Notes: generated by a model not told the origin, from the sequence alone. A stretch of 64,000 nucleotides of DNA from Botryllus schlosseri (GCA_051294905.1 CM119381.1:16430001-16494000); one strand, 5' to 3'. Counted from the stretch's first letter, positions 1 to 49,200 are shown. A program made the numbers and translations.

Positions 1-1117
1 TCGATCATATGATATTTGGACGACGTGGACGCGCGTGTGTTGTACTTGTGCGCTTTTGATTCAGAGGTAAAGAAGTCATTGAAATATTCGGGGCAACGAC
101 CGCAGTGAAACTCGTACATAAACTTGGCGATTTCTAGTTTCCGCATATCTTCTATGTTTAGGACGCCGAATCTCTTCAGCAGCGACTTATTGGATGGGCA
201 GCCAGGCCCCTTTGGGGCCCTAGCTATGATTCGGAGCACTTTATGCTGTAGTTTCTGCAGTGGCTTGAGTGCAGTTTTACTGGCAGCCCCCCAACAGAGG
301 ATGCCATAATGTAACTTCGATTGGATTAAGGATTTAAAGAGTATCAGGAGAACCCATGCTGGCATGAAGCGCCCAAGGCTGTAGAACAGGCCGCACTTCG
401 GTGATAATTTAGTTTCTAGGGACTGAATATGACTCTTCCAGGACATGTTCGAGTCCAGTAAAACTCCGAGACATTTGGCATTATCTGTGTTGGAAACGGG
501 CTGACCAGCGATATTAACGGTTAGGTTATTTTTTGAATTGACTGTCAGCTAGGCTTACCATATTTCGGAAATGAAAAAAGAGGACACTTTTTCAGAAATT
601 TCAGTCAAGCATAACTGGAGAAGAATTCTCAAAAACAGGTAAATTTCACCCGCTTCATGATCGGTTGACTAAAAAAAAAAAGGTCATCACTTCCACTCAG
701 AGCTCAAAAAAAAAAAGGTCTTCTTTTCGCTCAGAGCTGAAATCACCACTTTTCTCTCCGAAATACCCACCGGAGCTTCACTTCTGCGCTAATTTGCGGC
801 ATATCACTCGCAATTTCCTCTAAATCTGACCTAAATTTTCAAAAAAGAGGACAAAATCTCAAAAAAGAGGACAAAAGGGCGTCCTCCGAGGACACTTTCA
901 AAAAAGTCAAAAAAGAGGACAAATCCTCTTAAAAGAGGACGTATGGTAAGCCTACTGTCAGCAATTGCGATTTCGAGGCGTTTATGCAAAGGTTGTTCTG
1001 GGCCGTCCACTCATGGACTTTGGGCATTTGGTCACCAGTCAGGGCATCCAGCTCTGCCGTCGAAGATGCGGAAGAGAGGAGGTGAGTATCATCAGCGAAC
1101 AGTGTGGTTATATTAGT
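1..1117 (-). mobile_element. L2/CR1-like LINE reverse-transcriptase C-terminal fragment, split by a MITE
   Basis: Manual minus-strand translation: TLFADDTHLL (FADD at 1088-1099)...WTAQNNLCINASKSQLLTV, then after removing 550-954 plus one TSD copy the same frame continues NIAGQPVSNTDNAKCLGVLLDSNMSWKSHI...LHYGILCWGAASKT...LQHKVLRII to the window edge. This is typical of the CR1/L2 RT thumb region. Confidence 0.9.
550..954. mobile_element. hAT-type MITE family A (TIR TAGGCTTACCATA)
   Basis: TIR taggcttaccata / tatggtaagccta; exact 8-bp TSD ctgtcagc (542-549, 955-962); repeated AAAGAGGAC subterminal motif. Confidence 0.9.
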
Positions 1118-4675: not shown

Positions 4676-5369
4676 CCGAAGATGTTATAATGAAGTGGAA
4701 ATTGTAATATATGAAAAAGGTTCACAGTGCAGAACCTACCAAGGTTCGTTTGTGAACGTGAACCTCTAAATTTCCGACGTTCACACACAGAACGCGAACG
4801 TAAACCTCACGTTCACACCATCCCTAATGGATAATGCACAGTGGCACACGTGCATTGAAAGACTTGGCCAAAATCCTTTTTGCTAGCACACGTCGGGGAG
4901 TCGCATGTTGGCCGAAACGGCTTGATGTGTGCTGCCGCGATATTGGCTGGCAGTGAAATGCCTGTTTTTATAAATTATACATATCTTCATTGAGGGGAGA
5001 GGTATGCATATTCAAATCAGGCGATCTACGGACATTAAATCGCGACGCGCGAAGAAAATTCCAAGTTTATTAAATCAATCAAAAGTACTCTATAATTTAT
5101 GTCGATTTACGAAGTAATTTTTGACCACCTTCAAACTCGCTTCCACCCAATAGGAGTGTTTGGGGTCCGACTCTGGCTGGAATGAAAATCAATGGGTGCG
5201 AGAAATCGTCAGCTATAAAGTTGGTTCATGGGTATACCTATACCGTGACGTAACAACCCAATGACGTCGAATTTAAAAAATTGGTCTCTCATGAGGCATT
5301 TTCATCGCAATCGTTGTATCGTCTTTCATATGTCTTAAAATAAAAGATAAACTTTAAGAAGCAAAATAA

Positions 5370-28200: not shown

Positions 28201-31200
28201 CATGCGGAATGTGTAGAGCAAAGCTACTCACGTTCGTGAAAATGAGGTATTCGAGAAATTGTGATCAGCCCGCACCATTTTCACAAAGCGCAATGAAATT
28301 CTCAAAAAAATTACCAATCATTATCTCGAGTGCGATGCAGAACAGGAGTTGCATTCCTTGAGGTCGCATAAAATGGTATATAATTGAACCTTCCACATCA
28401 TTCATGCAGCTATGACGTCACTCGATTACTCGACGCCTAATGCTCGAATCACTCACTTGGGTACTCGACTTTGCCCCGCCGGTGAAGGTTTTAACAGCAT
28501 CGACTCAAAACCGATATCGGTCGGACTCTAATTCACGTTGTGAAGCTCGACCACTCACCCAAGCCTCCCTGATTCTCGTAAGACCTTGACACGACGGGAG
28601 GTCGTTCGCCGGCCGAAGTCTTGCGCACAGGCACGGATTCTTTCCGTGAGCTGTGATCCACGGGAGCCGAAGGCGCGCTTCGATGCGGTTTAGAATCGCG
28701 TAGGAAAGCGCGGACAGCTTCCGATTGCTCGTTTTCGTCGTCGGACGACTCGGACCGGCTGTCGGAGTTGGCGTCGATGTCATCAGGTACAGAGAGCGAA
28801 TCCTTATATTGAACGTGAATGGCGTAAGAGAAGCACGCGAATTCCCTGCATAAATCCTATCGCTATTCAATCGCACGTCACAGTTGTTGATATTATATTG
28901 CTCACGGTGCATGTTCTACGATTGTTGTCTACTGGAACTATTGTTTAGAACATTCTGGAATTTTGAAAGCAAACCACAAAGTCTCCCAGTTTGAGTGAAA
29001 GGAAGTAGTTAGTTTTGTCCTTGATGTTTTTGCGGCATATACACCGACTCTTGATATACACATATGCACACATGAGTGAATGATGCGCATATGCCGCTGG
29101 ACAAGGTGCAGATGTAGCCTTATTCGGTTTTCTAAATCTTGCACCGCCCCTCCATGCAATCCCAGTAATGGATACCAGTGTTACTAATCAGGTCTTTGGT
29201 ATGACCCGGCTGTGGATCGAACCCACGACTTACCGATCAAGAAGCCGAACGCTTCACCGTTGCGCTATCTTGTCGTTGTAACGATGACTAGTTTGTCGAC
29301 TCACTCAAGTGGTGTGGTTTCTCAGGTAAGTTCCACGGGTTACCAGTGACTTTGGTGATAGTAATGTAAAACTAGGGCTACTTTTTGACATGCCAAAATA
29401 AGTCAAAATTTTGTCAATATTGTAGCGTTAGTAATTTTTGCCAAAAATTTTTTTACCCCTGCATTTCGTTTGTATCGTAGATTTTGCACTGTCGGTGAAC
29501 TTATCATTTTATATTTTACAGCTTGTAGCCTACTTTATAAGCACTGTACATTGCAGACGGCCATTTTCTGCTCATTGTGAATCATAAGCAGTGAAATGAA
29601 ACAAATAGGTTGACATGGTGTTATGGTCAACGTGCCGCAACAGCCTAACTGCACCAAGCCTGCTAGGGCATTGCGTGGTTTTTATATCAAGATGCGCATG
29701 ATGAAAGATAGTGATGTGGACAACATTGTCAGAATGAAGCAACACAGTGTGTCACCAGCAGTGTACGCACAACTTCAGTGCTGTCAGCCAACAACTGCTG
29801 CTGCTGATCGTTCTTTCTCCATTCTTGACAAGTTACTTGGTAAGGACAGACACTTTCTACCCGAGAATGTAGGAAAGTATCTTTTGTTGCACTACAACAA
29901 ATTTTAGTTATTTCTACCACAATACGAGATGTAACGACTGGAATTCTTCATGAAAAAATTTGTCAGTTTCCAAGTCGAAAAAGTTTTTTCAGGCCAAACT
30001 ACTTCATAATGACAGACAGTTCCAACCCGAAATGAAGATAAGTAGTACAATTTTAACATTACGTGCGAAAACGCCTAATTTGCATACATGAGGTCAAAAT
30101 TAAGTTTTTCTGAGTAAAAAAATGTCAAAATTTGATTTTTTATGTCAAAATCTTCCATTTTTTAGGTAAAAAAACTCGCCCTAGTAATTACTATTACCAG
30201 GCTCCTTGAGAGCAGGCTTAGACAACTAGGTAATTCTAGTTGTTTAATGTCAGCGACATGCCGTTAATCTAATTCTGATCTAATTTGCGAAAACTTTCAA
30301 TGCTCTAATTTTATTTCTACTCTAATTTGCAGAGCCATGATTTGATACTGACGAAACTTGATTCAATTTGCAAATTAGAGAAAACATCATTGTAGACTCA
30401 GAAAAAGCACAGGTATCGTGCTACACAACTTCACTCAACACAATCGCAAATATAACTTACAGTTGAACCCCGTGTTCTTTCCGGCACATCCGGCAATGGT
30501 GATTGCTGGCAAGAAAAGGGAGACAGATCAAAACACACGCCACACACTAAAACGCCAATGGACTCTAACCCCACGAGACGTGGGTCTCGAAGCAGGACGG
30601 AAGCCGCCCCCTTGCGGGAAGTCCACGTCGGGAAACGTGCCCCGAGCGCCGGGGCTGAAATGCAGCTCCACTCGGAACCTTTTGTCGGACTGAGGGTCTT
30701 CGTTGGGATCTTCGTATAGCATGATAACGATCTGAAACACAAGCGGCGATGCAATCAAATACGATAATAAAGCTATAATTTTAAACCATATGGGGGGGCG
30801 CTTGTTCTCTGAACAGAGGTGCTCAATAACACTTTTACTTTTTCAGATTAATCAAATGGCTTTTACCTACTTCCACTTCTATTTACACATTTACACTGTA
30901 TTTTGCGAAATGTAAATTAGTTTTCGGATATACCTGCATCGATTTTCTGAGTTAAATTGTAACAATTGTTGCGAAGTAGGCTATGTATCGCTGTAAGAGA
31001 ACATATTTTGAAAAATTGCGCCCATTTGTAGTGGCATTGGTCATTTTGCGTCGGTCACGAAAATGTCACCCGTAATTTTGGAAGAAGCCTGTTAACTGCT
31101 GATTAACGTAATATTTTGTGATACGATTGTTAATATACAATGTTCTTTCCACTTCTCTAGTAGCTGACGATTACCCCTGACGAGTATCAGCCGAAAATAT

Positions 31201-34200
31201 TCGGGTTCATTTCAATATGAATACACTATTCAATTGTATATTAAAGTTCTGTACCTGCAAGAAGCCCTTCCGATATAAGTGTGCGAACTCTGAGCAAATT
31301 AAATTTTTGAAACCACTTACCCCACAACTTTTCACACCTGCATTAACTTCCCCTTGAAGTAGTTTTGACATTGGAAATTGTCACTTCTACTTTGAACTGA
31401 GTAGAATTTACAGAATTACTTCTACTGGAGTGTCAACTCTGACGACTTTTGTCTACCTCTGTCTCTGTCTCTGCAATTGCTGCCGGTAGACCAAGCAGTA
31501 AAATGGAACTGGTTGGATCCTAATTGCAGGTTATACGGCCGAAGTGTTTTAACGCTATCAATATATCTACAGGAAATACCTTTTCCTTCAGTTTTCATTT
31601 AAACGGAGGCACGTGACGGGGGTGAGGTAGGAAGGCAAGAACTACTCTGTACTAATGGATCAAAATGCCAACCTGTGTCATGTAATTCAATTCCGATACA
31701 GCATTCACATAATCCATTGCGCGCTTCCACTGGTCATCATTGTCTTCCTGTCACGGTAACACGAGTCGTGACATATCATCCAAGATATTAGCTCACCACG
31801 AAAAGAAGTTGGCGCACTCACGTTGCATAGTCCTCCATAACGTAAAATAGTCAGAAGAGAATGAATGTGGCTTTCGCTGGTAAAGTACAAACGTGTCCGG
31901 ACGCGCCTTCCCGGCGACAGGACGCCTTTGGAATACCTGTGGAAACATTTTAGAATCTTCAACATTCTCCACAGAATATACTCAGTTGTGTCAGATATTA
32001 CTGTTATCAATAAAATAGGTGTTCAAATGAAAAAATCTGTGCACGAGGAAATGAATAAATGCACAAACGTACCAAAACGAACGAAACTAAACTTGGCCTT
32101 TATTTATATCAGACGAGGACGCAAGACTATTTGCTGCATTCGCCAAAGCAATCCCCAAATTATCCCTAAGATTACTTCCAGGTAGGGCTTAAAATCGGAA
32201 ATGTTCAGGGATTGACGAACAGTTTTATTCATTGATGTAAGCTTTGAGATCGCACACAAGCTGCTCAACTTTTAGATTATGAAACGAATTCGTGATTGCG
32301 ACGCAGACTCCTGTAGAGCCACAACTACCTGGGATTCAATCGATAAGTGTCGTCCTCGAGGTTTCTTTCCAAGTCGACTTTGATTTTTCTGAGAAGCGGA
32401 ATACAATATCCCATGGCGATGTCCAGTTTCTGACTTTTCGAAATTCCGTACTCCTACGAGGAAAACGAAAATTTATACCCCCAAAGCATCGGCAGATTTG
32501 ACAGAGTAACGACTCAGCAAATGCAGCAACAACGCACGCACCTGCGGGATAACAATATCGGCAAGAGTTTTCGCCAGACTGTAGAGTTCGACAAATTTCT
32601 CCAGCTGCAGTTTGTCGTTGTGTTGCATGTCGTATCTGTTACAAATTCGATAACAAAAACACGGACATCAGCAACAGATTTACAGAAGTGGTTACACTGA
32701 AATTAGGGCTGGGTAGATCTTCGATTCCAGGTCTAGCATCAAGCTATGAATCGCCTTGAGTATTGGGCTTATGGACTAACACTCATCAAGACTTCACAAC
32801 GGTAAACTTGGTAACCTTACATCTGCGTATTTGCAACAGCAAGGAAAAGAATGTCACTTATACGATATCAATAATAGTTTCATACTATGCTTATGATCGC
32901 TCTTTGCAACAATATTGCGAGATGATCATAGAATATTCGTGGCCTTACGCTGCGTGTTTAGAAGTTGAGATAGTTTCAGTTTCACTTCAGTTTTCGAGGC
33001 TCCCACAGTGGTAACAAAGTATCGAAACCTGACTTACCGTTACTCAAAATAATTGCCTACTGACCCTACTGATCATTGCAATTGATACTTGACTAGGATA
33101 TGAGTGATCAAACCTTTGTGCCCAGTTCTAACCTCAATAACCGATTGCCATTATTCGGCACTAGGGGACGGACAGAACTTTATCTCACTTTATACAATCG
33201 TAAATGTCCGGTATCTTGCTGATGTCGAATTTCGATTTCGATAGCTTGAAGTCCTTCTCCAGCTTGCTCCATCTCTGCAGCATCAGGCTCAGACTCTCGT
33301 TGTGATAGAGCACGACGTCTGTTCAAAGCGGGAAAAGTCGAGTCGGTACAAAACACGGAGTATTATTAACGGCTCGATTGATATCGACAAACGCGGCACC
33401 TTCCTGAGTAGGATCCAAGAGCCTCTTCTTGATCTCTCTCGTCAGTTCTTTGATTAAAATGTGCATCCGCTCCATCATTTGTAGAGGCGCTTCGGACATT
33501 TTCAGTGCCGATACAATCGACGAAGTGTGTAGCGGTACGAGCTAGGGAAATCAAGGCGAAATGGTTGTGGCATGATCCAATTACCAGAGGTAGTCAGTAA
33601 CGGAGTATTTCTACATTTTAGGAGTAGCAGTCGCAGTAGAAGCAGAGATTTCCAAGTTAAGAGAAAAAGTAGAAGTACACCGTTGATGATTACCAGAGTA
33701 CTCTAATAGGTTTGGCAACTAGCATTACGTGCTCAAGCGGTTATGGACTACTTTCCACCAGACATGGGATGATTATTTCATGAATGTAATCGATTGCGAT
33801 TACGATTACTTCTGAATCACGCGATTACAATTACAGCAAAATCTGGAAGTACTCGATTACGATTACATTGGTAAAGTAATCATGAATACTCACGACTACA
33901 TTCACGAGGGCCTCCTGTCATGCCTCAGGCCTCATGTCATGAGAATAATTTTATTTTTTGAATGTGACATCATTTGATTGTTACGTCGCAATATACCATT
34001 GCACAACTTTATAACTGACGATTCCTCACACCCAACGATTTGCATTCGAGACATGAGCGTAACTGCCGTACACCAAACCCCCAATTCAGTGGGGGCGAGC
34101 TCCATGGGGGCTCATAATTATATTGTAAATCAAAAATGATAGAGTAACTTTGAGAAATTAAATTCACTTGGAGACTTTCTTCACGCTTCACCATTTCATG

Positions 34201-37200
34201 ACGCTAGATATCTTCATTTTAATATGCATACCCCTCCCCCTCAGGAAAAAATATGCATAATTTATAGAAATATACATTGCGGTACTGGCCATTATCGCTC
34301 CACGACACACCAATATGCAGTCGGTGCCAACATTCTACTCCACAAAAGTGTGCTACCAAAGAAAAACATTGGCCCAGACTTTCTATGCATATGGGTGCAC
34401 TGTGCAGTGTCCATAATAGTCACGCTTAATGGGCGCTACGAATGGTCCTGTCCTACCAATGTGAGCTCAGCTTACAAATGACCCCAATAGAGGAAATTGA
34501 TGCGAAGAAATGACAATTCGTGTATATGCCTCACAAAAGAAATTTTAGTTCAGTCTGCTACGTTTGGGCGACGTCAATATCTTTTGACCATATAACAGAC
34601 AACGGGTCACCAATTTAATAACATTCAAAAGTAATAATGACAACAAGCCTGCCCGAAGATGTTTTAAAATAGCGCTGTTTGAACTTTGCTGCTTGGCGAG
34701 ACGTATAGGTCTATGTGCGTACACCGGACACATATTTGTAATTTTGTACTCGTCAAATGAAAAATTACGATCTCTGCAATAAAAATCAACGGCTGCTGAT
34801 ATAAATCATAACCGAGTTGTTCTTTGCCGTTACGAGTTACGGCAGCCCCAGCTCGCGGGCCCACTCCCCGCCAAGCATCAACGTTCAAACTGCGTTGGAC
34901 TAAGCATAGCCAAAGACCAATACAAACGCTACTATTTGAAACTAGCAGAGTGGTGATTATTATCATGCGCCGAAGTCATGGTGTATGGAGTGTATTGATA
35001 ACTTGCTGTTGCTGATATACGGCATGACGGTGGTTCTTACAATTATACATCGAATATCTATTTACAATGTGCGAATAATTCGTCACGCAATGACGAAGAA
35101 AGCTAATACGGTACTTGTGACGTAATAATGAGCAGTGACGCTTGTAAATACGACGTTTTGTCAATAATGTGGTATAATGTCGTACTCTTCCTTGTTCACG
35201 AATGTTCAGTTTCTTTCCTAGTTCTTTTACAAATAAAAACTAATCGTTTTTTCACAAAGAAATTGATCAGATATGTAAAATAATTGATTGCGATTACGAT
35301 TACTTGTGATTTTTTTCGAGTGTAATCGATTGCGATTACGATTACTCGAAAATGCTGTAATCGTCGTAATCGATTGCGATTACTACTCACTATTATACTT
35401 CTACTAGAACTACTCAAATTTACACTCCTGGTTTTGAAAAGTGGATATTAGGCTTGTGATGAGTTTGCATCACTTAATCATCACGACTGGATATATCTTC
35501 GAGGATGACACCAATTTTGAAAGTCGCCACCTTCTATGAACTGCTAACGAACGAATAACTTCCTGACCAAACCCACGTTTTGAAACTACTTATCCAAGTA
35601 TTTGCACAACTTTCATATTCCATTTACTATTTTAAGCAGTTCTGATTGGAAATTGTTACTTCTACTTGCTTTTCTTGTAGTTTTGTATATTTATTGTCAT
35701 TTGTTTTGTGCCATTGAATATAATGTGTATACTCCTTCAGGTGGCGACTGTGTACTAAGGCCTTGCGGCCCCTCGTCGTCATCCTGGTCCGTACCGGATT
35801 TTCACTGGTGTGACAAATAAATGATTGATTGATTGATTGGAGTAGAAATTCACGGAGTTGCTTCTAATTGAGTAGCAGTGCTGAGTACTTTGAACAGTGA
35901 ACACCCCTATCGAAGACGAAGCGATTTGATTCAGATGGCAGTCATGTGGTATCTGCGAAGATACAATTGAATAGTGTATTCATATTGAAATGAACCCCAA
36001 TATTTTCGGCTGACATTCGTTATGGGTAATCTGGGATGACACACATATGGCTTTCCATACCACGATATGAGGGTAACACTGCTCTTTTTGTATACTTTCC
36101 AACGGTAAGGGAATCGGATTTTAACTCGGAATTAGATTTCAACTGCTTCCAAATACCCAGGTGGTCTTTCTCTACTTGCATGCTTGAAATGGTTTTTGAT
36201 CATCCAGTTTTTCGGAGTTGACATAGTTGCATCTCAAAATGTTTGAGTTTTGTCACACAGAATATATCTATCAACGTGTCTCCACCTTTTTCATCAGTGA
36301 ACTTGCAACACGTCATAACCCTCCAGTAGTGTGCGACATGGTATGTTACGTGTCATTCATGCCACAAAATAACAAGCAACTCACCGTAACAGGATCATCG
36401 ATTTTTTCCTGATTCAGTATCGATTGCAGCCGCTGCTTAACACTGAAAATAGGACGACAAAGAATAATATCTCACCATCGAAAGCGCAGGATGACGAGAA
36501 TAGAATCGTCATGCAAGATTGCAATCGGCGCTAAAATCGTGAAGAAATTAATGAAAGGCCCCGTTTATGATCATGCAGTATCACACACATGCGTGTCTGT
36601 GCACAGATGTTTCGAAAATCTTCGACTACGCGGTTTCGATAATTGATGCGTTAACGCAATTACACTCGCTGACGACAATTACATGTTGCTTTGTACCGTG
36701 TGCCTGACAAGCTAGAAAATTTCTTCAACCAAACTATTACTCTATGATTGAACGCGAAAATCCCATACCGTATATCGGAACCAGATTTGCAGTGTAGAAC
36801 CTGAAGCTTACATGTGTGTGAATTTCGATTTTTTGGATGGTACGTGATTGTAGTTGAACATGCATTTTTGCAGAATACAGCCAGAGTTACCTGAACCTTT
36901 CCTGCAACGAAGTTTGCGACCTCAAATTTTCTGTATTACTGTGTTGCAACAAACCTTTCGAGTCGGTGTCAGACTAACAGTTTAACATTTTGAATAGACT
37001 TCGATAATTGAAAAAAATTGGTACTGACACTAAAATTCAATACTTCACAATAAACCTGCAATGATCTTCAACCAATGCCAGCTGAAGCCGGCAGTAAGGC
37101 TATACGTCAAATCTGAATATTTGTGTGACGACTCATCAAAGTTACCCCCTAAGGATTTACATATAATAGTTTCGGATTCGCGATTCAAAGCAATTAACAG

Positions 37201-40200
37201 AATTATTAACCCGAGTCCCATGAAGTCATACCTTGAATTAGCACTACGATGTCTACTATGCGTCACTAGTGTCACCAATACACCATGTCACCAATACAGC
37301 ATATAGTGAACTAGGAATTAACGCTACGCGGCCAAAAACCTAAAGGTTTTCATCCACAGACCTACCACATTTTAAAATTACTACCGCGCCTTCCATCTAC
37401 ATAATTGTGCCGACGCTACGTCCAAATTACTAGGGCTGAGCGCAATGATTCGAGCACTCGAATCTGAATCGAGTATTAATTGTAACAAATCGAGTCGAGC
37501 ATACAGAGACGATATTTTCGAGTACTGAAACTAAAAAGCCTTTTCAATAAGAGTTATTTCAACGAGAAGTGTACTTTCTATTTATTTCCCAAGATGCAAG
37601 CCTTGAAACCCTCAATAGGTCTTATCACAGCAACCAAATCATGCAGGATGAAGCTACACACCAGGGTGGTAATGACTACACTCAATTTGTGTATTGACTC
37701 GACTTGGACTCCGAGTCATTGCGCTTAGACTCGAACCAAGTCATATGACCCGAGACTAGGGCGGCCAAGACAGACATTTCACTGTAACTTCGAAAAATAG
37801 TAAAGCCACCACATTATTGGTATTTCGTTTATCAGTCCTGCTACTTAGAGAATAGGGACAGAAACTGTTAGGACCGAGGAAAATTATGATATTATGAATG
37901 TGAGCCATTCCATATCACTCAAGCAGAGTTGAAAAAATTGATTGGAACCAGTTTGAACTCAAAACTGAACAGTGCACGGAAATGACTTGGACTCGACTCG
38001 AGTCACAACACTATGACTCGGTGGTGAATTGAAAATGACTAGACATGACTCAAGTCAAAACTATAACAGTGAGATTGACTTGTGACTCGGAACCTTGTGA
38101 CTTGGTCACAACCCTGCTACGCCAAGTTAGGGTATCGTGATCAACCTTCAGTATTGTATCAAAGCTCGAAAAAGTGCCAAATTATCTTTATGTGGTGTCA
38201 GACTGGCATTAATTTCTTTGCATTCGCATTAAAAATAAAATACATATTTTTACATATCCTCCATACACTTTATGCCGACATAACGATTAATACTCGAATA
38301 CTCGACCCAATTCAAAGCCTAATACTTGATTCAGGATCAAATCGCTCTGGCACTCAATTTTGCTCAGCCCTGCAAATTACGCGGATGTCAAAAACGTGCC
38401 AATCGACGCGAATTGATTCGCACTTGTACGACATAAACGAGGCCCGATTACGAAGAGAGCAGGCAGGAAGAAATCACGAGAGCGGTGGTACGTACGCAGA
38501 CTGCATCCCCCGCAGACGATGATCGTTTTCACCGTCCAGGTCATAGTGAAGGAAGCTAGACATGTAAAGCGGCGTAAAGGCAAAGAAACCGAAAACGCGA
38601 CGCAAAATAACAAAAAATGCGCTTCAATCCGCAGTTCCAGCCACACGGGCCGCCTGGTTCTCTGACCGAGACTCACTTCTGCTGGCACTCGCTTAAGCTG
38701 TCGCCTTCGCTATCGAGAAGGCCGTTCATGTTGGCGCTTTTCACCATCTGCACGAGAATTGGCGTCAGCTCCCCTTCCAACGCCAGCAGGCCCTGCGGTA
38801 CGAATGCGGCAGTTGAACGGTGTGCGGCAGAATTGTAACCAAGTCATAAGGTTTCGAGTCACAAGTCAATCTCACTTTTACTCGAGTGAATGACTCAAGT
38901 CCAAGTCCAAGTCAGTGAGTAGAGCAGTGGTTCCCAACCTTTTTGGTCTCGTTCCCCCCTTGGCCGATATTTGAGCTAAAATTCCCCCTCTATGAAAAAG
39001 TCGCCTGTGACTAAAAAATGTGCTTTTTAACGCGCAACCATTTGTTGACTGAGCAATTAAAGGCCAAACATATTCAGGTATGTCCGAATTATGTCGAATG
39101 CGGACCGCACTAAACTTTGGCCGCTGACGAATAATAAATCATCAAGTCTGCTTGCTATGGACTTGAGTTGAATCGATGAATTTGGTATGTTTTTCACGTT
39201 AGCTCATATGTTGGCTTGAAAAGTTAAAAAATTACACTAGCGGCCTTGTGCTGAATTCGGTTTGACGTTTTCCTGCCTAGTAGCAATTTGGTCGAGAGGC
39301 TGTCCCGGGCCCAACGAAATCGTCTCGTGAGTCTCACTTTATCAGTGGGTGAAATATCTACGGAAGGCATTTAAACATACACCTAGCTTGAAATCCGCCA
39401 AAGAAACATATAACTGTAAAGAGCTAATATCTACTTAACAGTTCTATAACATAAAAATCTAAAAACCTTGGGAACCCAGTGTATCTTCCGATACATTGTC
39501 AAAGCCATATTCCCCCTAAAAAATTTAAGCCAGATTCCCCCCTAAAACTTTCAAAATTCCCCCCAAGGGGGGAATTCCTCCCCGGTTGGGAACCACTGGA
39601 GTAGAGGGTCGATTGAAGTCACAGTGACGTGACTCGAGTCCGAGTCCAAGTTGTTGTGTTCACCGTTCAGTTTTGAGTTCAATCCGGTTCGACCCACTTT
39701 TTATAACTCTGCTCAAGTGACATAGAATGGCTCGCATTCACAACTATCGTAATTTTCCTCAGTCCCAAAAGTTTCTGGCCCTATTTTCCAAGTATCAGGA
39801 TCGATAGACAAAATACCGATGACGTGGTGACTTTACTATTCTTCGAAGTTACACCGAAATTTATTGGTCGTCCTGGACTCGAGTCATATGACTTGATTGG
39901 GGTCATGCAGAATGACTCGAGTACAAGACGAGTCAATACACAAATTGACTCGAGAGTCGAGTCATTTTACAAATTTGAAAAAATGACTATAGCGTCAAGT
40001 CGAGTCACCAACAAATCTAATATCCCAAAATCTGTTTTGGCACATCCTCGTCTACTGATAAAGTCGAAACTGATTGGAACATCTTGTTAATGATTGATAA
40101 TGAAAAAATACCTCCTAAATATTCAACCATCTCTACTAATTATGCAATGCATCAGAGCTGGTTAAGTATTCATCATTGGTTCTGAAGTAGAAGTAGAAGT

Positions 40201-43200
40201 AACAATTTCCAATACTACTTCAGATGGAAGTAGAAAATCAGGTTTTAAAAGTACTCAGAATTTTCAAAAAGCAGTCCAAACCGCTCCAAAAAAATGGAAC
40301 TGCGTTACTGACCTGACTGGTGAGTAGAATATTTGTGGTGGGAAATTTTGACACGACATACCTTGGCAAAAGCAGCAGCAGTCATCTGTACCCGGCCCTC
40401 ATCGGAGGCATAAATCTTCAAATCATGCCGGTACGTGCTGTGTAGCCGCAGCAAACCGCATCCGGGATATCCAGCATAGTCTCCTGCAACAAACAACGTA
40501 CTTATCGACAACTAAGCGTGAAACAACGTCATAATGTAACGCCGCCACGTCACACGTGTCATAAGCCTGATTCAAATCAGTGATGTCACGTCGATTCTGA
40601 CAATCGGAATAATTCGGGAATGCACGATTGCTCACGATCAAATTCATGCACAGACATGATGCGTTACAGCAAAATAACGGTAATTTTGAACACAATATAG
40701 TGTTAACAGTAATTTTGAACACGATATAGTGTTATTTACAACGGAGCCTCGTTTACTGGGGCATTGGCAAGATACTACAAGCTTGGAATTTCCAAAGAGA
40801 ACCCTTCGGAACGCATGGTTAATGTTCCAGCATGCCCCTGTTAGTTTTTCAAAACTAATAAGAACAGAGTGGTGTGCTAACATACTCGTACTGCTACCTA
40901 ACATGTTCCATCAGCAGCTCGCATCTACAATGGTAAAAGGTGATATCAAAGCCGTAGAAGACTGAAAAATCGGCCAATATCCTTCAGGAAATGCGATGCA
41001 CTATTAGCTTCACTACAAATAGGCTATCCAACATGTTTTTAAATCTTTAATTTATGAAAGTGGCCACTTTTGATATTTACTTAAATCTTTCGAAGAATGT
41101 TAGTTATTCAGTACTGGTCAAAATATATCCAGAATTTCGAGGGCTGGCTTTATATAATCTATTACATAAAATATCGGTTGTAGACAAAGACACTGATGGT
41201 TTGTGTTAGTGCGTTACACATAGGTACAAATTAATGAAGCAGTTACCACTAGATATGCATGTGTTTATTAATGTATTTATTACTATATTTCTTTTATTTA
41301 TATATTTATATAAACACTAAACAGTTAAGAAACACAAAGTGTTGTCAAGTGATGAACTAACACTTCTCAATTGTTCAATTGTAAGTGTTCTATCGCTAGT
41401 ACCGCTACATCACATTTACAGTACAGGGACAGAAATCTGATTGCTAACTGAAATCGATAGCATGCTTATAGAAGGATCCATCACAAAATCATGCCACAAA
41501 TGCAGATCCGGAATTCAAAGCACAAAGCCCGAACTATTTATCAATTACCTGTGAAATGTCCTTCCACTAGACAAATACCGAAAGAATCAGTTGAATTTCG
41601 ACTGTCAGAACACAAACTACACGAAGAACTTTTACCTTTGCCGCCCGGATACATGCACCGAAACGCACGGCCCAGGTCTTCCGCTTGCTTGCGGCCCGCC
41701 GGCGTCAGCTCTCCGCCCCATTTCAAAATCAGCAATAGCGTTGGCCTTTTCAGAGTCCTTGTGTCTGTGGCACGGAATTATTGAGTTATGATAATAGTGA
41801 AAACACATCGGAAATAACGATTTGTAAGAATAGCAGATGATCCTAGATTCAATTTTTCGTCTTTTGATTTCACATTCATTACAACCAGATCGTTTAGAGC
41901 TGTGGTTTTCAACCTGTGGGTCACAAAACCTGTTTCCCAATCAGGTCATGAGTGAGTCTGGTCTGACCTTATTTCATATTAAGTAATCAGCTTCCCAAAT
42001 ACACCATAAGTATGTCTGGGAAAAGTGCTGACCTTGTATTTTTTTCTCAATCAGCTTCCGAAACGGGGTGAGAGTAAGTCTCCAAGGGTGTGATCAAAGT
42101 TTTTTTAGAAATCAGCTTACCAAATTTAGAGTTGGGCCTCAAAACATTTCAAATCAGAAATCGAAACATAAAATAGTTGAAAACCGCTGATGTAGATAGA
42201 GTGTATTTGTTTGATACAGGTGTGATCAGACTAGTTGACCCTTTGGGTCATATCGATCTTTCCTATCCGAATACTGTGAATGAGTATTCTTTTGCATCAT
42301 CATAGATACTGTCTGCTTATTATGCATTTCAGTAGGATGAAGAAATAAAATCTCGCTAAGCAACAAGGTCAGACTAAAATGTTGCCAATTGGCAATAAAT
42401 GCGGGATGTTAATTCAAGGCGTATTCTAATCTTATATAGATTTTTGATGGTCTGATCAGTAACAACTAATTCTTATTATATCCCAATTGGCAATAAATGT
42501 GGGATGTTAATCCAAAGCGTATTCTAATCTTATAAAGACTTTTGATGGTCTGATCAGTAACAACTAATTCTTATTATTATCCATTAGTGTTTTCAAATTA
42601 GACATCTCACACATTTGAACAGCACTGAGGCAGTAAGCGCTAATGCAAAATACTTACGATCGCTATCGTCGGAACTAGAAGTGATGCTTTTACCGCCGGT
42701 CACTTCTTTGAACTGAACTTTCCGATTGATACCGGAGAAATGTCCATACCTAACGGCATTGGCGCAAGTTTCAAATGTATATTTTGGTACATATCACAAT
42801 TCATCAAACCCACATTTCAAGAACGGTCTTCAACTGCTCGAGTTTCTGATGCCTTTCGCACAAAATTTCGTTCGGCTCCGCCAGTAGATATCTCGCAACG
42901 TCCAATACTTCTTGCAGTTGTTTCGGACGCTTCAGTTTTAAGCATCCACTTTGTTGGCCGTTGTATTTGTGAAAAACATCGAAAAATCTGCGACAACGCG
43001 TACAGATAGCGATGATGCCAAAGCCTGACGCATTGTACACTGAACAGAGCTTACTTGAGATGCTGAACTTCCATTTTGAGCTTCTGCTTCGGAGTACGGT
43101 CGCCGTGTCGAATGACTGCTATCACACATCGGAGTTCCATCCTACAAGAAATTACAACTCTGATATAATACCAGCAATTGGCTCGGTGATTGTTTCCACA

Positions 43201-46200
43201 TATAAATCAATAAATTCCCTTCTTGAACTGCAAATGAAAAATCCAAGGCACACTCCTTTGCTGTGTGATACTCAAAAGTTATTATTTATCCAAAAGCACA
43301 AAGGTGGTCGGTAATAAAGTACATCTGCTTTTTCAGATAACTCAAAAGACATTAGATTATTTATTAGAGCAATGTTGATATTTGTGATAGTATTGAAGTG
43401 GAAATACATACTACGATACTTTTTGAACCTTCGCGTTTACAGAGCAACTTTTGGATATGGCTACATCAATTATATTATATAAAGCAAACAACGGAGAATT
43501 CTTTTCAACCCTGTCGCTCTTTACTTTGATCAGCGTGACATATCGTCCGTAGAATCAATACCGGTATCTAGAAAGTGCACACATTTGAAAGTTTTAATGC
43601 AAGTTCAAGGTCAACAATTATATGTTTGAACGTTTTCAAGCGTCATCATCCGTCAGACAAATAACAGCCTGCAAACCGTACTCACATCGTTCCTGACGTC
43701 GTAGGCACGATCGGTATTTCATCGTCGGTGGGTATGGACCACGGAATATGAAATTGCGGCGCTAGATTTCGTATTATTATATTTCTGAAACAGAATCGGC
43801 CGTGGTTATAAGCACTTGCACCAATTCCAGCGGAACCAAAAAAAGATAAAACGATCGCAACGCTTACCCGAGAACTTTCGCACAGTCGTCATAATATTTT
43901 CTGGCGTTCTTCACAAAACTAAAACCATTCACGTCGCACACGTATGACTTTCCGTGAGCCCGCAAGAAATCGAATCCGCACACGGTTTGCTGCAAGACAA
44001 AAGAAATGATCGGAGTTGGTCAGTAAAGAAGTACTTTTCAGTACAACACGTTTTCAGACAAAACAATAAGTGTTTTCTACTTGCACTGCATACTCAAGTG
44101 GTGATGTTTTCAGACTGCTCGCATTTCTTGACAACTTATCCATCAAGATTAGCTACATTTTGCACTTATGGTTATTGCAGCAAACAATACGTTCATATTG
44201 TTAAATTTATTCCACTGGAAGCTTTTCGACTGGCTCTCTTCAGCAGTGAACGCCAGTAAATGAGGTTAACCAAGTTCGGAATATAGAAAGAATTTTGTCG
44301 TTGTGACGTAATAATGACAAGTACACAAGTCGCGAACGACAGTACTTGTCATTATTACGTCATTATTGTGTACTTGACATTATTACGTCACAACGACAAA
44401 ATTCTTTCTATATTCCGAACCTGGTTAACCTCATTTACTGGCGTTCAATGCTGAAGAGAGCCAGTCGAAAAGCTTCCAGTGGAATAAATTTAACAATATG
44501 AACATATCGTTTGCTGCTATATTGAAGTTCTGTACTTCGTAAGGCCTACTTATGGTTGTTTAAAGCAGAAAGCAATTTTGGGATATGTTTGCATTACCCC
44601 TATGAGTGAAACAGCCCTGAATATGTTTGAAAATTGCGCAAACTTGCAATGTCATTTATCAGTCTTTTTGAGTCAGTGATACGAAAGTAACCACCTCCGA
44701 TTAACAATTAAAAGTACGCGATGCCATGGCCTAATCATGAGAAGTCTTCATACCACTAATTTTTACTTCCACTCAGAGCAGATTTGGCAGGACTTGGGAA
44801 TGGCTATTTCTATCTGTAATTGAGAATGAATTTACTGCGATGGTTCTCGTTCAATATCAACGCTGACTACTTTGCACCTTGACCACCGCTAGAGATGACT
44901 TCGTCGGCTGGAGTTCGTCCGATATGAACGCGGAACGTATCAAGAAAAAGGGGATCTGTCAATTCTACCTTGAAAGCCAAACAGACTTTTCGCGCTATCA
45001 ATTTTTCCTTCGCCGACAGAATGACGGGAAAGCGAACTTCCTTCCCGTCCTTATCCCGTTCAACCTTTCCATCGAGGGCCGGCGATTTTCTGGCTTCCGC
45101 GTGAGCGTACTCGGGCCCGACAGTGTAAACCTGAAGGATAGAATAGAGATTTATGTAGCTCCGCTGCAAACAGCACCAAGTAGAAAAAGGCAGGTAAATC
45201 ATCGTAATTAAAAGACAGTGGCATACACTCACACAGAGAAGTGTTCAGTAACGAAGTACTTCTACCATTTCAAGGTGCTCAAATAGGTTTTGCCAACTTG
45301 CAACTGACTCAAGTTGATCCATTTTAACACTGATTACTACTTCCACTTCACAGTTTTTCAGCTAACACTACTCGCTTGTAATTGAGCGGAATTCAGAGCG
45401 TAACTTCTACTTTCATTGAGTACTTTGACTACTAAGGTCTTGTCCAAAATTCGTGAAATTTAAAAAATTCTGCATTGTTAAGTATCATTCTGTATGTAGA
45501 TTATCAATAAAAAGCATCAATGACCCGGCAAGAAGCTCATGGGAACGTCTTTTCCTTTCGCAAGAAACGTTTGAAAATAGCTGACCAAGGAACACGGAAT
45601 CACGGGTCTTGATTGGATAATCGATTATGGTTCAATGGAACTACTGCACGGCTTCAATTTCTTTCTATTTGTTTTATATCCCTCCTAGCAAGCATTCGTT
45701 GTGATCTAACAGGTAATGATTTATGATTCATTCGATACATGTTGAGTTGCAAGGTACATGATGAACAAGTTTAACACCTGCTTCATAAATGCCTTTAAAG
45801 AATGACCGGATAATGCGAAGGAAACAGCTGTACATGCCTTGCGTTCACCGGGAAAGCAAGGAAACCAGAGAATATTGCAAAGGCCCTTATACAAGTGGCG
45901 AGCAAATTTCATAATTCAGAGCTGGTCCATAATCATTGAATACAAAGATAAAGCTTAACAAGGCGGTACTTTGTCTGATCTTATTCAGTCTAAGCCCTGG
46001 TATGTCATTGAGTTTTTGAATGCTCTGGGGATTGGCTGTAACAGCCGTTAGATGTCTGGCACTTATCAGATTCTCACAAGAAGTTAATTCCTAGGAAAGT
46101 GAGCTGTCACTCAAAGAACTAAACAGCAAGTCTCCGTCGTGATCATTGAAGCATAGGCCATTAGCCAATCAAGAGCCGTGATTCCGTGTTTGCTAGTCAC

Positions 46201-49200
46201 GTCCTCTCTTCGGCAGCTACTATCAAACGCCTTGCAGAAAATGCGAGCTTCTTGCTGGCTTGTCAATGCTTCCTGTCAATAATCTATCGAATGCGACATT
46301 GCAGCACAGCATTTTTGAAATTTTGGACAACCCTCTTGACCACCACTGGCTGCATACAAGACTAGACGTTATTACCTTTACATCGGTACCGTCCGTGGGC
46401 ATGAATTCTTCAAAAATATATGACCCGGATTTTCTTATAGAACTGTGAGAGGAATATTGACTGCTACGATTTCCTACCTGAAAAGCAAAGAGAAGCAGGT
46501 TACATGGATATAAATATTCAGTAATAAACATATTTTATCTATACGAAACACTTACTTACTTAGCTGACGATTGCCCGTGAAGAGTGTCAGATTGAAAAGC
46601 GTCGGGTTCTAATATATTTACATGATGAATATATTATTGAAACGTAGGCCCTATATTAAAATAACTTAGCTGATGACAGAAACAGAACCAAGCTGCACCA
46701 AAGAAACTGATTTTCAATATACAAACTAGGCAACAAAGGGCATCGCTGGCGAATTCAATTGACCAATTGAGCAACTAAAAACACTACGAATGTTTGTTGG
46801 ATTCGTAAAAGGAATTCCGATTTGTTTCATGGTTGCAGTTTGCATATTTGGATTCAGTAATTGCTTTAGAGCACTGTTTCTTAACATTTTTAGCGATTCG
46901 TAACCGCTTGAGGTTTAAATAAAATTTATCTGTTCCTTTCCAACACAACCTCTGATGGTACTTATATTGAAATCACAAACACCATTGACTAAATTTGCCC
47001 AAAAAATATTCCACTGTTTGCGGGTTCACAAAATAATTTAGGGCTCAAGATAGCGTATAGGGCTAATTCAAAAGTGCATCGCGTACCCACTGATTTGGTG
47101 CTTCATGCCCCAAGAAGTTCAGGGACCCATGGCTATGAACCCATGATTTAGAGAAAAGCAGTCTTCACTCAATCATCATCGAATATCATTCTCAGTTATT
47201 GATGACATTTCATCATGGCCAATGTATCAATTTAGTTCAATAGCCTACAGAAGTAAATTCAAGGCGTACTTTTCGGAATAACTTTTGGCATCCACCACCA
47301 GCTGATGAAGGGTAATAAATGTGAATGTTATGATCCTCAGCGTCTATCGGCTTCTCAACAAAAGGTTTATGAAACGTTTCGTCACCAATCACAATATGGT
47401 CATCAAATTCCTCGAAGTTTTGTTCAGCTTAAATTCAAAACGTCATTCATTAATTGTTGGACGAAGTTGCATGACAACATCCTCCATACCTTCATCTCCG
47501 TTCCTATTGCAGACTGCATACCTTGGAGTTTCAATACCATTCTCTTTCAGAATTTGATAGACTTTCCTGCGGTCTTGAATCGAAAATTGTATGTCGAGGT
47601 CGTTGATTAAGAAAGGCTTCCGGAGTTTCGCATATTCAACAGCCTTATCAAGTGGAAAGCCTGCGAATGCATTAGTTATGATGTAGTGGGAGTCCAAGAC
47701 AAAAACTACATCCAAATCGAGTAGCATAAAAAAAATCAAGCTGAAATCTAGTTCCACAAGAAGACCACAATATTTTTAAAACAAAGAGTAAATAATTTTT
47801 TTGTGAAATGGTGATCAACGATACAACTGCTGGATCATCAAGTCACTAGGTAACAAATATAATTATGATAATTATTATAAAGGTAGATGATATGTAAGAA
47901 ATATAGATACATGTAATGGGGCCTTGGCCTACAATGACTTATCATCTTCTCAGATTCGTAGGCCTAAGTTGCAAGAATGCAATATTAACAGCATCTACCC
48001 ACGCGACCCTGGTTCAAGTCTCGTTGTCGACGGTTATTCTGGGCCCCTCCTACCCCGTGTCACTGTTGTCACGGCGACAAAAAAGTCCCGATAAAGTAAG
48101 AAAAAAAGCAAGAAATAGCTTAAAAAAGCACCGACGAAGAAAGATCATCTTCGAAGAACACTGTGACTTCGGGCGATAGGTCAACGTGAATGCCAGTTTA
48201 AGAGACCCCAACTGGTCATTCGTTCGGCATCCCCCTATTTGTTCATTATATGACATTGTGTGTCTTGTATATCGCATTGTAGGCTACATTGTGTGTGTGT
48301 CTGGGCAGATGAAAATATAAAATGACGATTATTGACTGATTAACAAATGTGGATATTTATAATAGTATTATATATATTTGACGAGACCTACTTACTGTTG
48401 TCAGTCAAGCTGGATGAACATGGAAACTACGACATACAAAGACAAGGCAAACAAAAAATTTTTGATTTGGTAATCAAAGTAACAAAAATTATCTACAAAA
48501 CAATAATTTTGGAATCTGAAATATGGTAGCCCTAATATAGTGAAATGTCATTTATTTTTCAAAAATATCATCAGTGGTTCTTCAAAGAATATCAACGTGA
48601 AGTTTCAGACTGTAGGCCAATAACTCTCAGTAAACCAAGCGAGAAAAAAAAAGTATCGGAGCAACATAACCAGCGTGACACATGGTCAATCTACTAACAG
48701 CAAAAACATCAGTAACAGCTGAACAAAGAAGAAATCAACCGAAAATATGTACCTGACGAGTGAAAAGAAATCAAGCAGTCGCACAGCGGCCATTCTTCGA
48801 CTGGACAGTCGAGTATCGTATCTTGACTGAAAACTTCAATTGTAAGATACTCAAATAAACCGAGTCTGCTCAGGATTTCTCTCATCGGCCGAGCGGCAAC
48901 TTTCTTGTCCATGGCACATATTCCAACCACAATCTTTTTACGATTGCCCTGTACATAGATATACCAGACTACATCACTAACGTTAACCCAACGCTCAAAT
49001 ACAATGTAAACCGATGTTACATATACAATATCCCCCTACCGACAAAAGCTCTGGGCAATATAACAAACAACTCATGCAGATCGTCAAAATCAATAGAACC
49101 AAATTCACACAACAAATAGGCTCACCGATGACCGTCTCATCATGGAACGTTCAGAATGACCATACGCACCAAATGCAGGATTACCACTGGAGACTGATAT

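What the first reader, a model, noticed from the sequence alone, without database searches (positions are those of the whole stretch)
31163..46607. Two families of minimal hammerhead ribozymes sharing a covarying 5'-flank/loop II pseudoknot
Seen: family 1 (31163-31206) reads gctgac-gatt-accc-CTGACGA-g-tatcagc-c-GAAA-atat-TC-gggt (other copies have loop gtgtcag, so the consensus loop is tgtcagc). Family 2 (44213-44257, minus) reads actggc-gtt-cactg-CTGAAGA-g-agccagt-c-GAAA-agct-TC-cagtg. Outside the core almost every base differs, yet the geometry is identical: a 1-bp stem II, a 7-nt loop II, a 6-nt palindrome as stem III (AATATT vs AAGCTT), and a 6-mer ending exactly 8 nt before the core that is complementary to the last 6 nt of loop II (gctgac/gtcagc vs actggc/gccagt). 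Established: tiny type I hammerheads with reduced stem II and palindromic stem III occur in Penelope-like elements and cleave as dimers. Inference: the pseudoknot is a selected tertiary contact replacing the usual loop I/loop II interaction, and these are probably uncatalogued families. I cannot confirm novelty without a search.
Basis: partly seen in the sequence, partly recalled or inferred. Interest (0 to 1): 0.88.

Follow-up and report, generated by a model that had tools for sequence, protein, structure and literature searches.

The report
Penelope-type mini hammerheads with pseudoknot helix
These are dead, truncated copies of a very abundant retrotransposon tail carrying a tiny hammerhead ribozyme motif; that association is known, but here the ribozyme's second helix seems to be built by pairing with a short box just upstream instead of by a hairpin.

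Summary
There is one intact family-1 motif (31163-31206 +) and two decayed copies (35988-36031 -, 46563-46607 +). Family 2 has an intact copy (44213-44257 -) and a twin with one stem I mismatch (44437-44481 +), inside a 156-nt inverted repeat in an intron.

All show the type I core, a 4-5 bp stem I, a G-C-only stem II and a palindromic stem III. A 6-mer ending 8 nt before the core complements loop II. Rfam finds nothing.

Family 2 is a dispersed repeat of roughly a thousand copy-equivalents with a 5'-truncation gradient, which fits Penelope-like element tails. No Penelope ORF lies in this window.

The two families are homologous: 4 of 6 pseudoknot pairs are identical and 2 changed compensatorily. 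A third variant from a metagenome contig has the same geometry and a third Watson-Crick pair at position 1.

The pairing adjoins C11.1, giving a 7-bp helix II equivalent. A natural type II hammerhead with a 1-bp stem II and an essential 6-bp pseudoknot is already published, so this is a new variant of a known kind. Cleavage is untested, and RNA reads showed no ends at the site.

The scan has noted this motif repeatedly elsewhere in this genome.

The parts
31163..31206 (+). Family 1a intact minimal type I hammerhead. Pseudoknot 5' strand 31163-31168; linker 31169-31172; stem I 5' strand 31173-31176; CUGACGA 31177-31183; G10.1 31184; 1-nt linker 31185; pseudoknot 3' strand 31186-31191; C11.1 31192; GAAA 31193-31196; AUAU 31197-31200; U16.1-C17 31201-31202 (predicted cleavage after 31202); stem I 3' strand 31203-31206.
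31207..31242 (+). 3' tail of the family 1a repeat unit, shared with the inverted decayed copy
   Evidence: (I4: 74 nt, 92%)
35958..36031 (-). Family 1a decayed copy. It starts at 'attaccc' and so lacks the 5' pseudoknot strand. Core is ATAACGA, 10.1 is A, TG replaces TC at the cleavage site, and the loop keeps gucagc.
46563..46607 (+). Family 1b decayed copy (core GTGAAGA, one extra base before GAAA, stem III AAGCGT). It is 86% identical to metagenome locus L070.
44213..44257 (-). Family 2 intact hammerhead, in the sense of the host pre-mRNA. Pseudoknot 5' strand 44257-44252; stem I 44248-44244 with 44217-44213; core 44243-44237; pseudoknot 3' strand 44234-44229; predicted cleavage after 44218.
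44437..44481 (+). Family 2 twin hammerhead with an A.G mismatch in stem I (44448). Predicted cleavage after 44476.
44173..44521 (.). Head-to-head inverted pair of two 5'-truncated family 2 elements (arms 156 nt, 96% complementary). It lies in an intron of a minus-strand gene and folds as a hairpin of -271 kcal/mol.

Best explanation
These are 3'-terminal relics of a very abundant, 5'-truncating retroelement, most likely a Penelope-like element or a passenger of one. Each carries a minimal type I hammerhead.

Shown by the sequence:
- The core is complete (CUGANGA, GAAA, U16.1-C17).
- Stem I is 4-5 bp and covaries.
- Stem III exists only as a 6-nt palindrome, so an active ribozyme would need two copies pairing through it. 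This is the double-hammerhead arrangement known for Penelope and newt motifs.

Inferred:
- Helix II is not a hairpin. After the G10.1-C11.1 pair, a single linker nucleotide crosses the groove.
- The next six loop nucleotides, which run directly into C11.1, pair with a 6-mer lying 3-4 nt upstream of the stem I 5' strand.
- This gives a 7-bp helix II equivalent and also ties the far ends of helices I and II together. That does the job of the usual loop-loop contact.

The copies in this window are dead insertions. They are truncated or mutated, or locked in a long foldback inside an intron, and they have no tandem partner. They are not expected to cleave here.
For: - Motif against chance: 3 matches against 0.01 expected.
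- Pair counts on six copies: 93.8% of cells pair, falling to 13-38% when the 3' partners are slid. Stem I has 4 of 5 pairs changed on both sides. In the pseudoknot helix, 2 of 6 pairs changed on both sides and 96.7% of cells pair.
- Independent variant: among 108 metagenome pattern hits, only L070:33-77 has a stem I and a palindromic stem III. It also has a 6/6 Watson-Crick pairing at the same 8-nt offset, with U-A at pair 1.
- Control: among 113 random pattern hits in viral contigs, none combines these features, and 3 of 113 reach 6/6 at any of 9 offsets.
- The total distance from 6-mer to core stays at 8 nt while stem I is 4 or 5 bp and the linker 4 or 3 nt.
- Duplex energies of the 6-bp pairing are -5.8 to -8.5 kcal/mol.
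- Repeat nature: DNA contig word depth is 24,978 over 44175-44285 against 12-20 in the flanks, and about 6,000 further upstream. Many contigs end at 44173/44175, and others continue past 44327 with a shared consensus.
- The best-supported variants among copies inside the ribozyme are structure-neutral. They are N7 (44239), loop C>U giving G.U (44233, 44461), and 44477 C>G with 44450 G>C, which are the paired positions 1.1 and 2.1.
- Literature: Penelope hammerheads have a 4-5 bp helix I, a 7-8 bp helix II and a palindromic helix III, and inverted truncated copies are typical (PMC4209133, PMC8557442). A natural type II hammerhead with a 1-bp stem II and an essential 6-bp pseudoknot cleaves at more than 1.2 per min (PMC3088659, Fig. 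4).
- From my own knowledge: one nucleotide suffices to cross the deep groove of a 6-bp stem in H-type pseudoknots (Pleij 1985; the SRV-1 pseudoknot).
Against: - No cleavage data exist. The raw RNA reads showed no pile-up of ends at the predicted sites at about 20x family-level depth (table 6).
- Only three related lineages support the pairing. Three of six pairs never vary, and my search pattern fixed CAG in the third lineage.
- Pair 1 is confounded. In family 2 and L070 the linker nucleotide could pair with the same loop base, giving a 2-bp hairpin instead.
- Nested alternative folds compete. In family 1 the loop UCAG pairs with the core CUGA. In family 2 ACUGG pairs with C17 plus the stem I 3' strand.
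- Monomer folds are no more stable than shuffles.
- No Penelope RT or GIY-YIG ORF lies in this window. The Penelope link therefore rests on architecture, on literature and on unverified earlier notes.
- I could not read Lunse et al. 2017, so I cannot exclude that this variant is already drawn there.
Confidence: 0.6

Rival explanations
1. The hammerheads are real, but the upstream 6-mer/loop II pairing is an on/off switch or misfold rather than part of the active fold. The loop strand would toggle between the upstream box and the catalytic CUGA (family 1), or the upstream box would compete for the stem I 3' strand (family 2).
For: In family 1a the upstream box gCUGACGA duplicates the core box CUGACGA, and 10 of 13 nt are repeated in tandem. 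The minimum-energy fold pairs CUGA of the core with UCAG of the loop. In family 2 the minimum-energy fold pairs ACUGG with CCAGU across the cleavage site.
Against: The competing pairings are not conserved between families: loop to core is 5 bp in family 1 but only 3 bp in family 2. The pseudoknot register and the 1-nt linker are conserved in all three lineages. A validated precedent shows that a 1-bp stem II plus a 6-bp pseudoknot is an active architecture (PMC3088659).
Confidence: 0.12
2. The complementarity is inherited baggage with no structural role. The ribozyme, if active at all, would work slowly with a 1-2 bp stem II and an unstructured loop, like the short-helix II type I hammerheads of chrysoviruses.
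For: All lineages are homologous and share CUG/CAG. Type I hammerheads with 0-2 bp helix II occur naturally and cleave at 0.001-0.01 per min (PMC13725137). Reviews describe Penelope hammerheads as lacking tertiary contacts (PMC7761336).
Against: There are three compensated substitutions at two pairs and no uncompensated one among the intact copies. My rough estimate for this arising by chance is about 1 in 10,000. The common population variant at the loop keeps a G.U pair. The offset is fixed despite changes in stem I and linker length.
Confidence: 0.15
3. The carrier is not a Penelope-like element but another non-autonomous repeat, such as a retrozyme or a SINE-like element.
For: No Penelope ORF lies in the window. 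The copies are very short, about 80-180 nt.
Against: The copies are dispersed or inverted, not tandem 170-400 bp units with canonical loop-loop hammerheads as in metazoan retrozymes (PMC7229834). The 5'-truncation gradient and the head-to-head inverted pairs are Penelope hallmarks (PMC8557442). Earlier scan notes, which I did not check, place the same motif just after a GIY-YIG ORF elsewhere in this genome.
Confidence: 0.1
4. These are chance look-alikes and not ribozyme motifs at all.
For: There is no Rfam hit and no cleavage evidence.
Against: The full core occurs in roughly a thousand copy-equivalents, and variation is confined to N7, wobble and compensatory sites.
Confidence: 0.03

Closest known systems
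Minimal type I hammerheads of Penelope-like elements (Cervera & de la Pena 2014, PMC4209133; Lunse, Weinberg & Breaker 2017, not readable here)
   Same: Type I topology with the full core and G10.1-C11.1. Helix I is short (4-5 bp). Helix III is absent or palindromic, which implies dimer action. The motifs are massively dispersed, mostly as truncated single copies, and some occur as pairs on opposite strands.
   Different: The published motifs have a hairpin helix II of 6-8 bp with a bulged base after A9, and they are described as lacking tertiary contacts. Here the hairpin is 1 bp, and the remaining 6 bp come from a strand upstream of stem I.
Pseudoknot-stabilised hammerheads, especially the metagenome type II ribozyme with a 1-bp stem II and a 6-bp pseudoknot (Perreault et al. 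2011, PMC3088659, Fig. 4)
   Same: Stem II is 1 bp and is extended by a 6-bp Watson-Crick helix whose other strand is tethered to the far end of stem I. In that ribozyme the pseudoknot was shown to be essential.
   Different: That ribozyme is type II. Its 3' tail after position 10.1 pairs with loop I, it is a monomer with a proper stem III, and it comes from bacteria or phage. Here the loop strand before 11.1 pairs with the 5' tail of an open stem I (the mirror arrangement), in a dimer-requiring eukaryotic retroelement motif.
Short-helix II type I hammerheads of chrysoviruses and fusariviruses (PMC13725137)
   Same: Type I hammerheads with 0-2 bp helix II occur naturally.
   Different: They have a long helix III, no pseudoknot is reported, and cleavage is slow. 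They sit in the 5' UTRs of RNA viruses.
Non-circular hammerhead permutations SGC, CSG and GCS (Eckert & Weinberg 2023, PMC10085705)
   Same: Core helices are formed as pseudoknots, and stems I and II are joined by a short linker.
   Different: The block order here is the ordinary C-G-S (type I). Only the 5' strand of helix II beyond position 10.1 is displaced, a case their block scheme excludes by assumption.

Membership tests
Hammerhead ribozyme, type I | Conserved core CUGANGA ... GAAA ... U16.1-H17 in the order C-G-S, with G10.1-C11.1 | tested here: met
Hammerhead ribozyme, type I | Stem I closing the motif, supported by covariation | tested here: met
   4 of 5 pairs changed on both sides; 44450 and 44477 are a compensatory variant pair.
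Hammerhead ribozyme, type I | Helix II of several base pairs | tested here: inconclusive
   As a hairpin it is 1 bp (2 bp possible in family 2 and L070). It reaches 7 bp only if the pseudoknot is counted.
Hammerhead ribozyme, type I | Match to the Rfam hammerhead covariance models | tested here: not met
   gathering threshold, 0 hits; E up to 10, no hammerhead family
Hammerhead ribozyme, type I | Self-cleavage 3' of position 17 | tested here: inconclusive
   table 6: no pile-up of RNA ends at about 20x family-level depth. All reads came from other copies.
Penelope-like element minimal hammerhead | Helix III absent or a short palindrome (dimer-competent) | tested here: met
   AAUAUU and AAGCUU
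Penelope-like element minimal hammerhead | Long hairpin helix II (6-8 bp) with a bulged base after A9 | tested here: not met
   definition from PMC4209133
Penelope-like element minimal hammerhead | Location in the pseudo-LTR or 3' end of an element encoding RT plus GIY-YIG endonuclease | tested here: inconclusive
   No such ORF lies in the window. The 5'-truncation gradient, the common 3' end and the head-to-head inverted pair fit. Earlier notes of a GIY-YIG ORF next to the motif elsewhere were not checked.
Penelope-like element minimal hammerhead | High-copy dispersed occurrence, mostly as truncated single motifs | tested here: met
   1,265 DNA contigs were laid, and word depth over the motif is about 1,000 times that of the flanks
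Pseudoknot-stabilised hammerhead (Perreault 2011) | Watson-Crick helix of 4 or more bp linking the stem I side to the stem II side, maintained by covariation | tested here: met
   6 bp, with 2 pairs carrying compensatory change, in 3 lineages. The sample is too small for a formal significance test.
Pseudoknot-stabilised hammerhead (Perreault 2011) | Pseudoknot required for fast cleavage | not testable with these tools
   This needs mutant kinetics.
Metazoan retrozyme | Tandem 170-400 bp repeats with canonical type I hammerheads and loop-loop contacts | tested here: not met
   no tandem units, and copies are dispersed or inverted. Definition from PMC7229834.
Non-circularly permuted hammerhead (SGC, CSG, GCS) | Block order other than CGS, GSC or SCG | tested here: not met
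   The order here is C-G-S (PMC10085705).

The most novel reading that the evidence does not exclude
A previously undescribed hammerhead connectivity. In it helix II is split: G10.1 stays with the core, while the rest of its 5' strand lies upstream of stem I, and a single nucleotide crosses the groove. This would give Penelope-type dimeric hammerheads a built-in tether between helices I and II. These motifs are reputed to lack tertiary contacts and to be nearly inactive in vitro. The tether could explain how they work in vivo. It would also add a strand-displaced form outside the six block permutations now recognised.
Probability: 0.3. Interest if true: 0.6.

Novelty: new variant of a known kind. 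Interest (0 to 1): 0.42.

Why it matters
Penelope hammerheads number in the tens of thousands in animal genomes. Their activity in vitro is poor, their role is unknown, and reviews describe them as lacking the tertiary contacts that make hammerheads fast at cellular magnesium levels.

A subfamily in which a covarying pseudoknot both supplies helix II and tethers it to helix I would be a natural candidate for an efficient Penelope ribozyme. It would offer a simple experimental handle (delete or compensate six bases) on whether these motifs cleave in vivo.

It also shows that current descriptors and Rfam models, which demand a hairpin helix II, miss a family with about a thousand copies. The loci in this window have no functional importance in themselves.

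Tried and rejected
- Rfam at the gathering threshold and at E up to 10 gave no hammerhead hit. The microRNA-like hits only reflect the 156-nt foldback.
- A relaxed in-window descriptor and a pseudoknot-signature scan found no further real copies. The 6/6 hit at 57119(-) lacks a cleavage site and a stem I, so it is chance; shuffles give 2.1 hits.
- I looked for a Penelope ORF in 165 stop-to-stop frames and ran Pfam on the ten longest. None was found.
- That blocked the protein route to related loci. Splicing the host gene by hand to query the protein databases would have meant pasting a long constructed sequence, so I left it out.
- The viral-contig and prokaryotic-genome scans returned only random matches.
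- The upstream CUGACGA box of family 1 cannot be the true core, because no 10.1-11.1 pair or helix II can then be drawn.
- There is no conserved distal extension of stem I in the flanks.
- Lunse 2017 and Arkhipova 2017 are not held in the library, and no supplement is held for Cervera 2014.
- My first regex scan failed because of lazy matching, and I rewrote it.
- One hand-written structure string (the family 1 pseudoknot hairpin) was mis-registered, and I ignore its value.
Full report
**What is there.**
The quoted letters are present at the quoted coordinates. The strict pattern CTGANGA-N9-GAAA-N4-TC occurs three times in the 64-kb window against 0.01 expected, and none of 100 shuffles reached three.

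A descriptor that also requires a 4-bp stem I and a palindromic stem III keeps two fully intact motifs, 31163-31206(+) and 44213-44257(-). The third pattern match, 44437-44481(+), is the inverted twin of the second and has one A.G mismatch in stem I.

Two more family-1 copies are decayed:
- 35988-36031(-) has core ATAACGA and TG at the cleavage site, and begins only at 'attaccc'.
- 46563-46607(+) has core GTGAAGA and an extra base before GAAA.

Rfam finds no hammerhead, either at gathering thresholds or at E up to 10. The only weak hits are microRNA models that respond to the foldback.

**What carries the motifs.**
The two family-2 copies lie head to head in a 156-nt inverted repeat that is 96% complementary. 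As RNA it folds into a hairpin of -271 kcal/mol.

I laid one raw RNA run, two RNA contig sets and one DNA contig set on 41400-44700. This showed three things.

1. The region lies in an intron of an expressed minus-strand gene. The spliced joints have CT..AC ends, and the exons are 41635-41764, 42658-42747, 42812-42987, 43055-43140, 43685-43784 and 43868-43991. Translated frames look like a PPIP5K-type kinase/phosphatase, read by eye.
2. Family 2 is a very abundant dispersed repeat.
   - Summed DNA word depth is 24,978 over the ribozyme plus tail, against 12-20 in the flanks and about 6,000 over the upstream part. The tool warns that summed depth is not a copy number.
   - Many contigs break off at 44173/44175, which marks a common 3' end.
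   - Others continue past 44327 with a shared consensus, so longer copies exist.
   - This 5'-truncation gradient, the common 3' end and the inverted truncated partner are what the literature describes for Penelope-like elements (PMC8557442). The literature also describes minimal hammerheads found 'close to each other but in opposite strands' (PMC4209133).
3. RNA reads covering the repeat all come from other copies, and 99% run on into unlike sequence. No position shows a pile-up of molecule ends, so there is no sign of cleavage, though power is low.

The family-1 units are even shorter, about 80 nt from the 6-mer to a 36-nt tail. No Penelope RT or GIY-YIG ORF is in the window. The Penelope assignment is therefore an inference here. 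Earlier notes of this scan report the same motif just downstream of a GIY-YIG ORF elsewhere in the genome, and I did not verify them.

**The pseudoknot.**
In the intact copies the strands are:
- family 1: gcugac / (a/g)ucagc
- family 2: acuggc / gccagu

Four of the six pairs are identical in the two families. The two pairs that differ are both compensated: G-C becomes A-U at pair 1, and A-U becomes G-C at pair 5.

To obtain an independent variant I scanned the metagenome collection with CTGANGAGNNNCAGNCGAAANNNNTC. Of 108 hits, exactly one, L070:33-77, has a stem I (5-6 bp) and a perfect palindrome (AAGCUU). That one also has a 6/6 Watson-Crick match, ucugac/gucaga, ending exactly 8 nt before the core, with U-A at pair 1. 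It shares upstream sequence with family 1 and is 86% identical to the decayed 46563 copy. It thus represents a third subfamily.

As a control, 113 random matches to the looser pattern in viral contigs gave no candidate combining these features. Only 3 of the 113 reached 6/6 at any of nine offsets.

Formal counting on the six copies gave:
- 93.8% of cells paired, against 13-38% when the 3' partners are slid;
- pseudoknot helix: 3 invariant pairs, 2 pairs with change on both sides, and 1 pair departing only by the C.A in the intact family-1 copy;
- stem I: 4 of 5 pairs changed on both sides.

Among genomic copies of family 2, the best-supported variants inside the ribozyme are all structure-neutral. 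They are N7, a loop C>U that keeps G.U at pair 5, and the compensatory pair at positions 1.1 and 2.1. The table is truncated, so this is only suggestive.

**Geometry (inference from established structures).**
The 3' strand of the pairing runs without a gap into C11.1, so the new helix stacks on the single G10.1-C11.1 pair. Together they give 7 bp, which is the helix II length reported for Penelope hammerheads (7-8 bp, PMC4209133).

The one nucleotide between G10.1 and the far end of the 6-bp helix is the classical minimum for crossing the deep groove of a 6-7 bp stem in H-type pseudoknots. This point comes from my own knowledge (Pleij 1985; the SRV-1 pseudoknot).

The 3-4 nt linker from the 6-mer to stem I joins the distal ends of helices II and I, which lie side by side in the active fold. 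The summed distance stays at 8 nt while stem I and the linker trade one nucleotide.

The closest validated precedent is the natural type II hammerhead of Perreault et al. [quoted passage not shown] The present motif is the type I mirror image of that arrangement.

**Caveats.**
- The sample is three related lineages.
- My pattern fixed CAG in the third lineage.
- At pair 1 the linker base could alternatively pair with the same loop base in two of the three lineages.
- Nested alternative folds compete. In family 1 the loop pairs with the core CUGA, and the upstream box is a near-duplicate of the core box with 10 of 13 nt repeated. In family 2 the upstream strand pairs with C17 plus stem I.
- These competing pairings differ between families, so I rate a conserved switch as less likely than a structural pseudoknot, but it is not excluded.

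**Function here.**
Stem III can form only between two copies. No copy in the window has a tandem partner.

The one intact copy in the pre-mRNA sense (44213-44257, minus strand) is embedded in a near-perfect 156-bp foldback with its inverted twin. That foldback should out-compete the ribozyme fold. I therefore expect no activity at these loci and regard them as relics.

**Novelty.**
Each of the following is published:
- hammerheads in Penelope elements, and their dimer requirement (PMC4209133);
- pseudoknots linking stems I and II, and a 1-bp stem II with a 6-bp pseudoknot (PMC3088659);
- type I hammerheads with almost no helix II (PMC13725137).

Reviews describe Penelope hammerheads as lacking tertiary contacts (PMC7761336). 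The non-circular permutation scheme of Eckert & Weinberg assumes that the strand next to CUGANGA is uninterrupted (PMC10085705).

I found no description of a Penelope-type dimeric hammerhead whose helix II is supplied by an upstream strand. However, I could not read Lunse et al. 2017. I class the finding as a new variant of a known kind. The scan has already flagged the same motif many times elsewhere in this genome, and two follow-up agents reached the same reading.

Noticed in passing
window 31164-31189: In the intact family-1 copy the 13 nt CTGACGATTACCC are followed directly by CTGACGAGTATCA, with 10 of 13 identical. The pseudoknot 5' strand therefore sits in a near-duplicate of the catalytic CUGANGA box. 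The loop can pair either with that box or with the real core. The origin (a small tandem duplication?) and the meaning are unexplained.
   Followed up: partly
window 42200-42240: A repeat of about 40 nt in the same intron is extremely abundant. DNA contig word depth is about 10,000 and RNA contig depth about 2,400, and both flanks carry a shared consensus in other copies. Its identity is unknown.
   Followed up: no
window 33953-34415 (+) and 4827-5281 (-): A dispersed repeat of about 470 nt at 70% identity contains TA(G/A)CTGACGATT. This is the same box as the family-1 pseudoknot strand plus linker, but no hammerhead core follows it.
   Followed up: partly
window 37728-37977 and 39658-39904: Long inverted repeats with about 250-nt arms in three blocks (80-84% complementary) enclose about 1.7 kb. 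This looks like the ends of a DNA transposon or foldback element (I2, I3, I7).
   Followed up: no
window 42385-42577: Two tandem 95-nt units spaced 98 nt apart, 95% identical (D2), lie in the intron.
   Followed up: no
window 41635-43991 (-), probably on to about 49035: Spliced exons of an expressed minus-strand gene are supported by RNA contigs with GT..AG introns. The translated frames look like a PPIP5K-type inositol pyrophosphate kinase/phosphatase, read by eye and not searched.
   Followed up: partly
window 56141-56524 (-): An open frame gives a weak Pfam match to the adaptor complex medium subunit family (E = 7e-07, just under the curated cut-off). It is probably an exon of a neighbouring gene.
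   Followed up: no
window 3-548 (-): An open frame of 182 aa running off the window start reads by eye like the C-terminal part of a non-LTR (LINE-type) reverse transcriptase. Pfam gave no hit.
   Followed up: partly
L070 (JGI24021J15306_10061451) 33-77: A 3.6-kb metagenome contig with eukaryote-like composition (41% GC) and no long ORFs carries an intact hammerhead of the 46563 subfamily near its end. It comes either from environmental DNA of the same animal or from a relative.
   Followed up: partly
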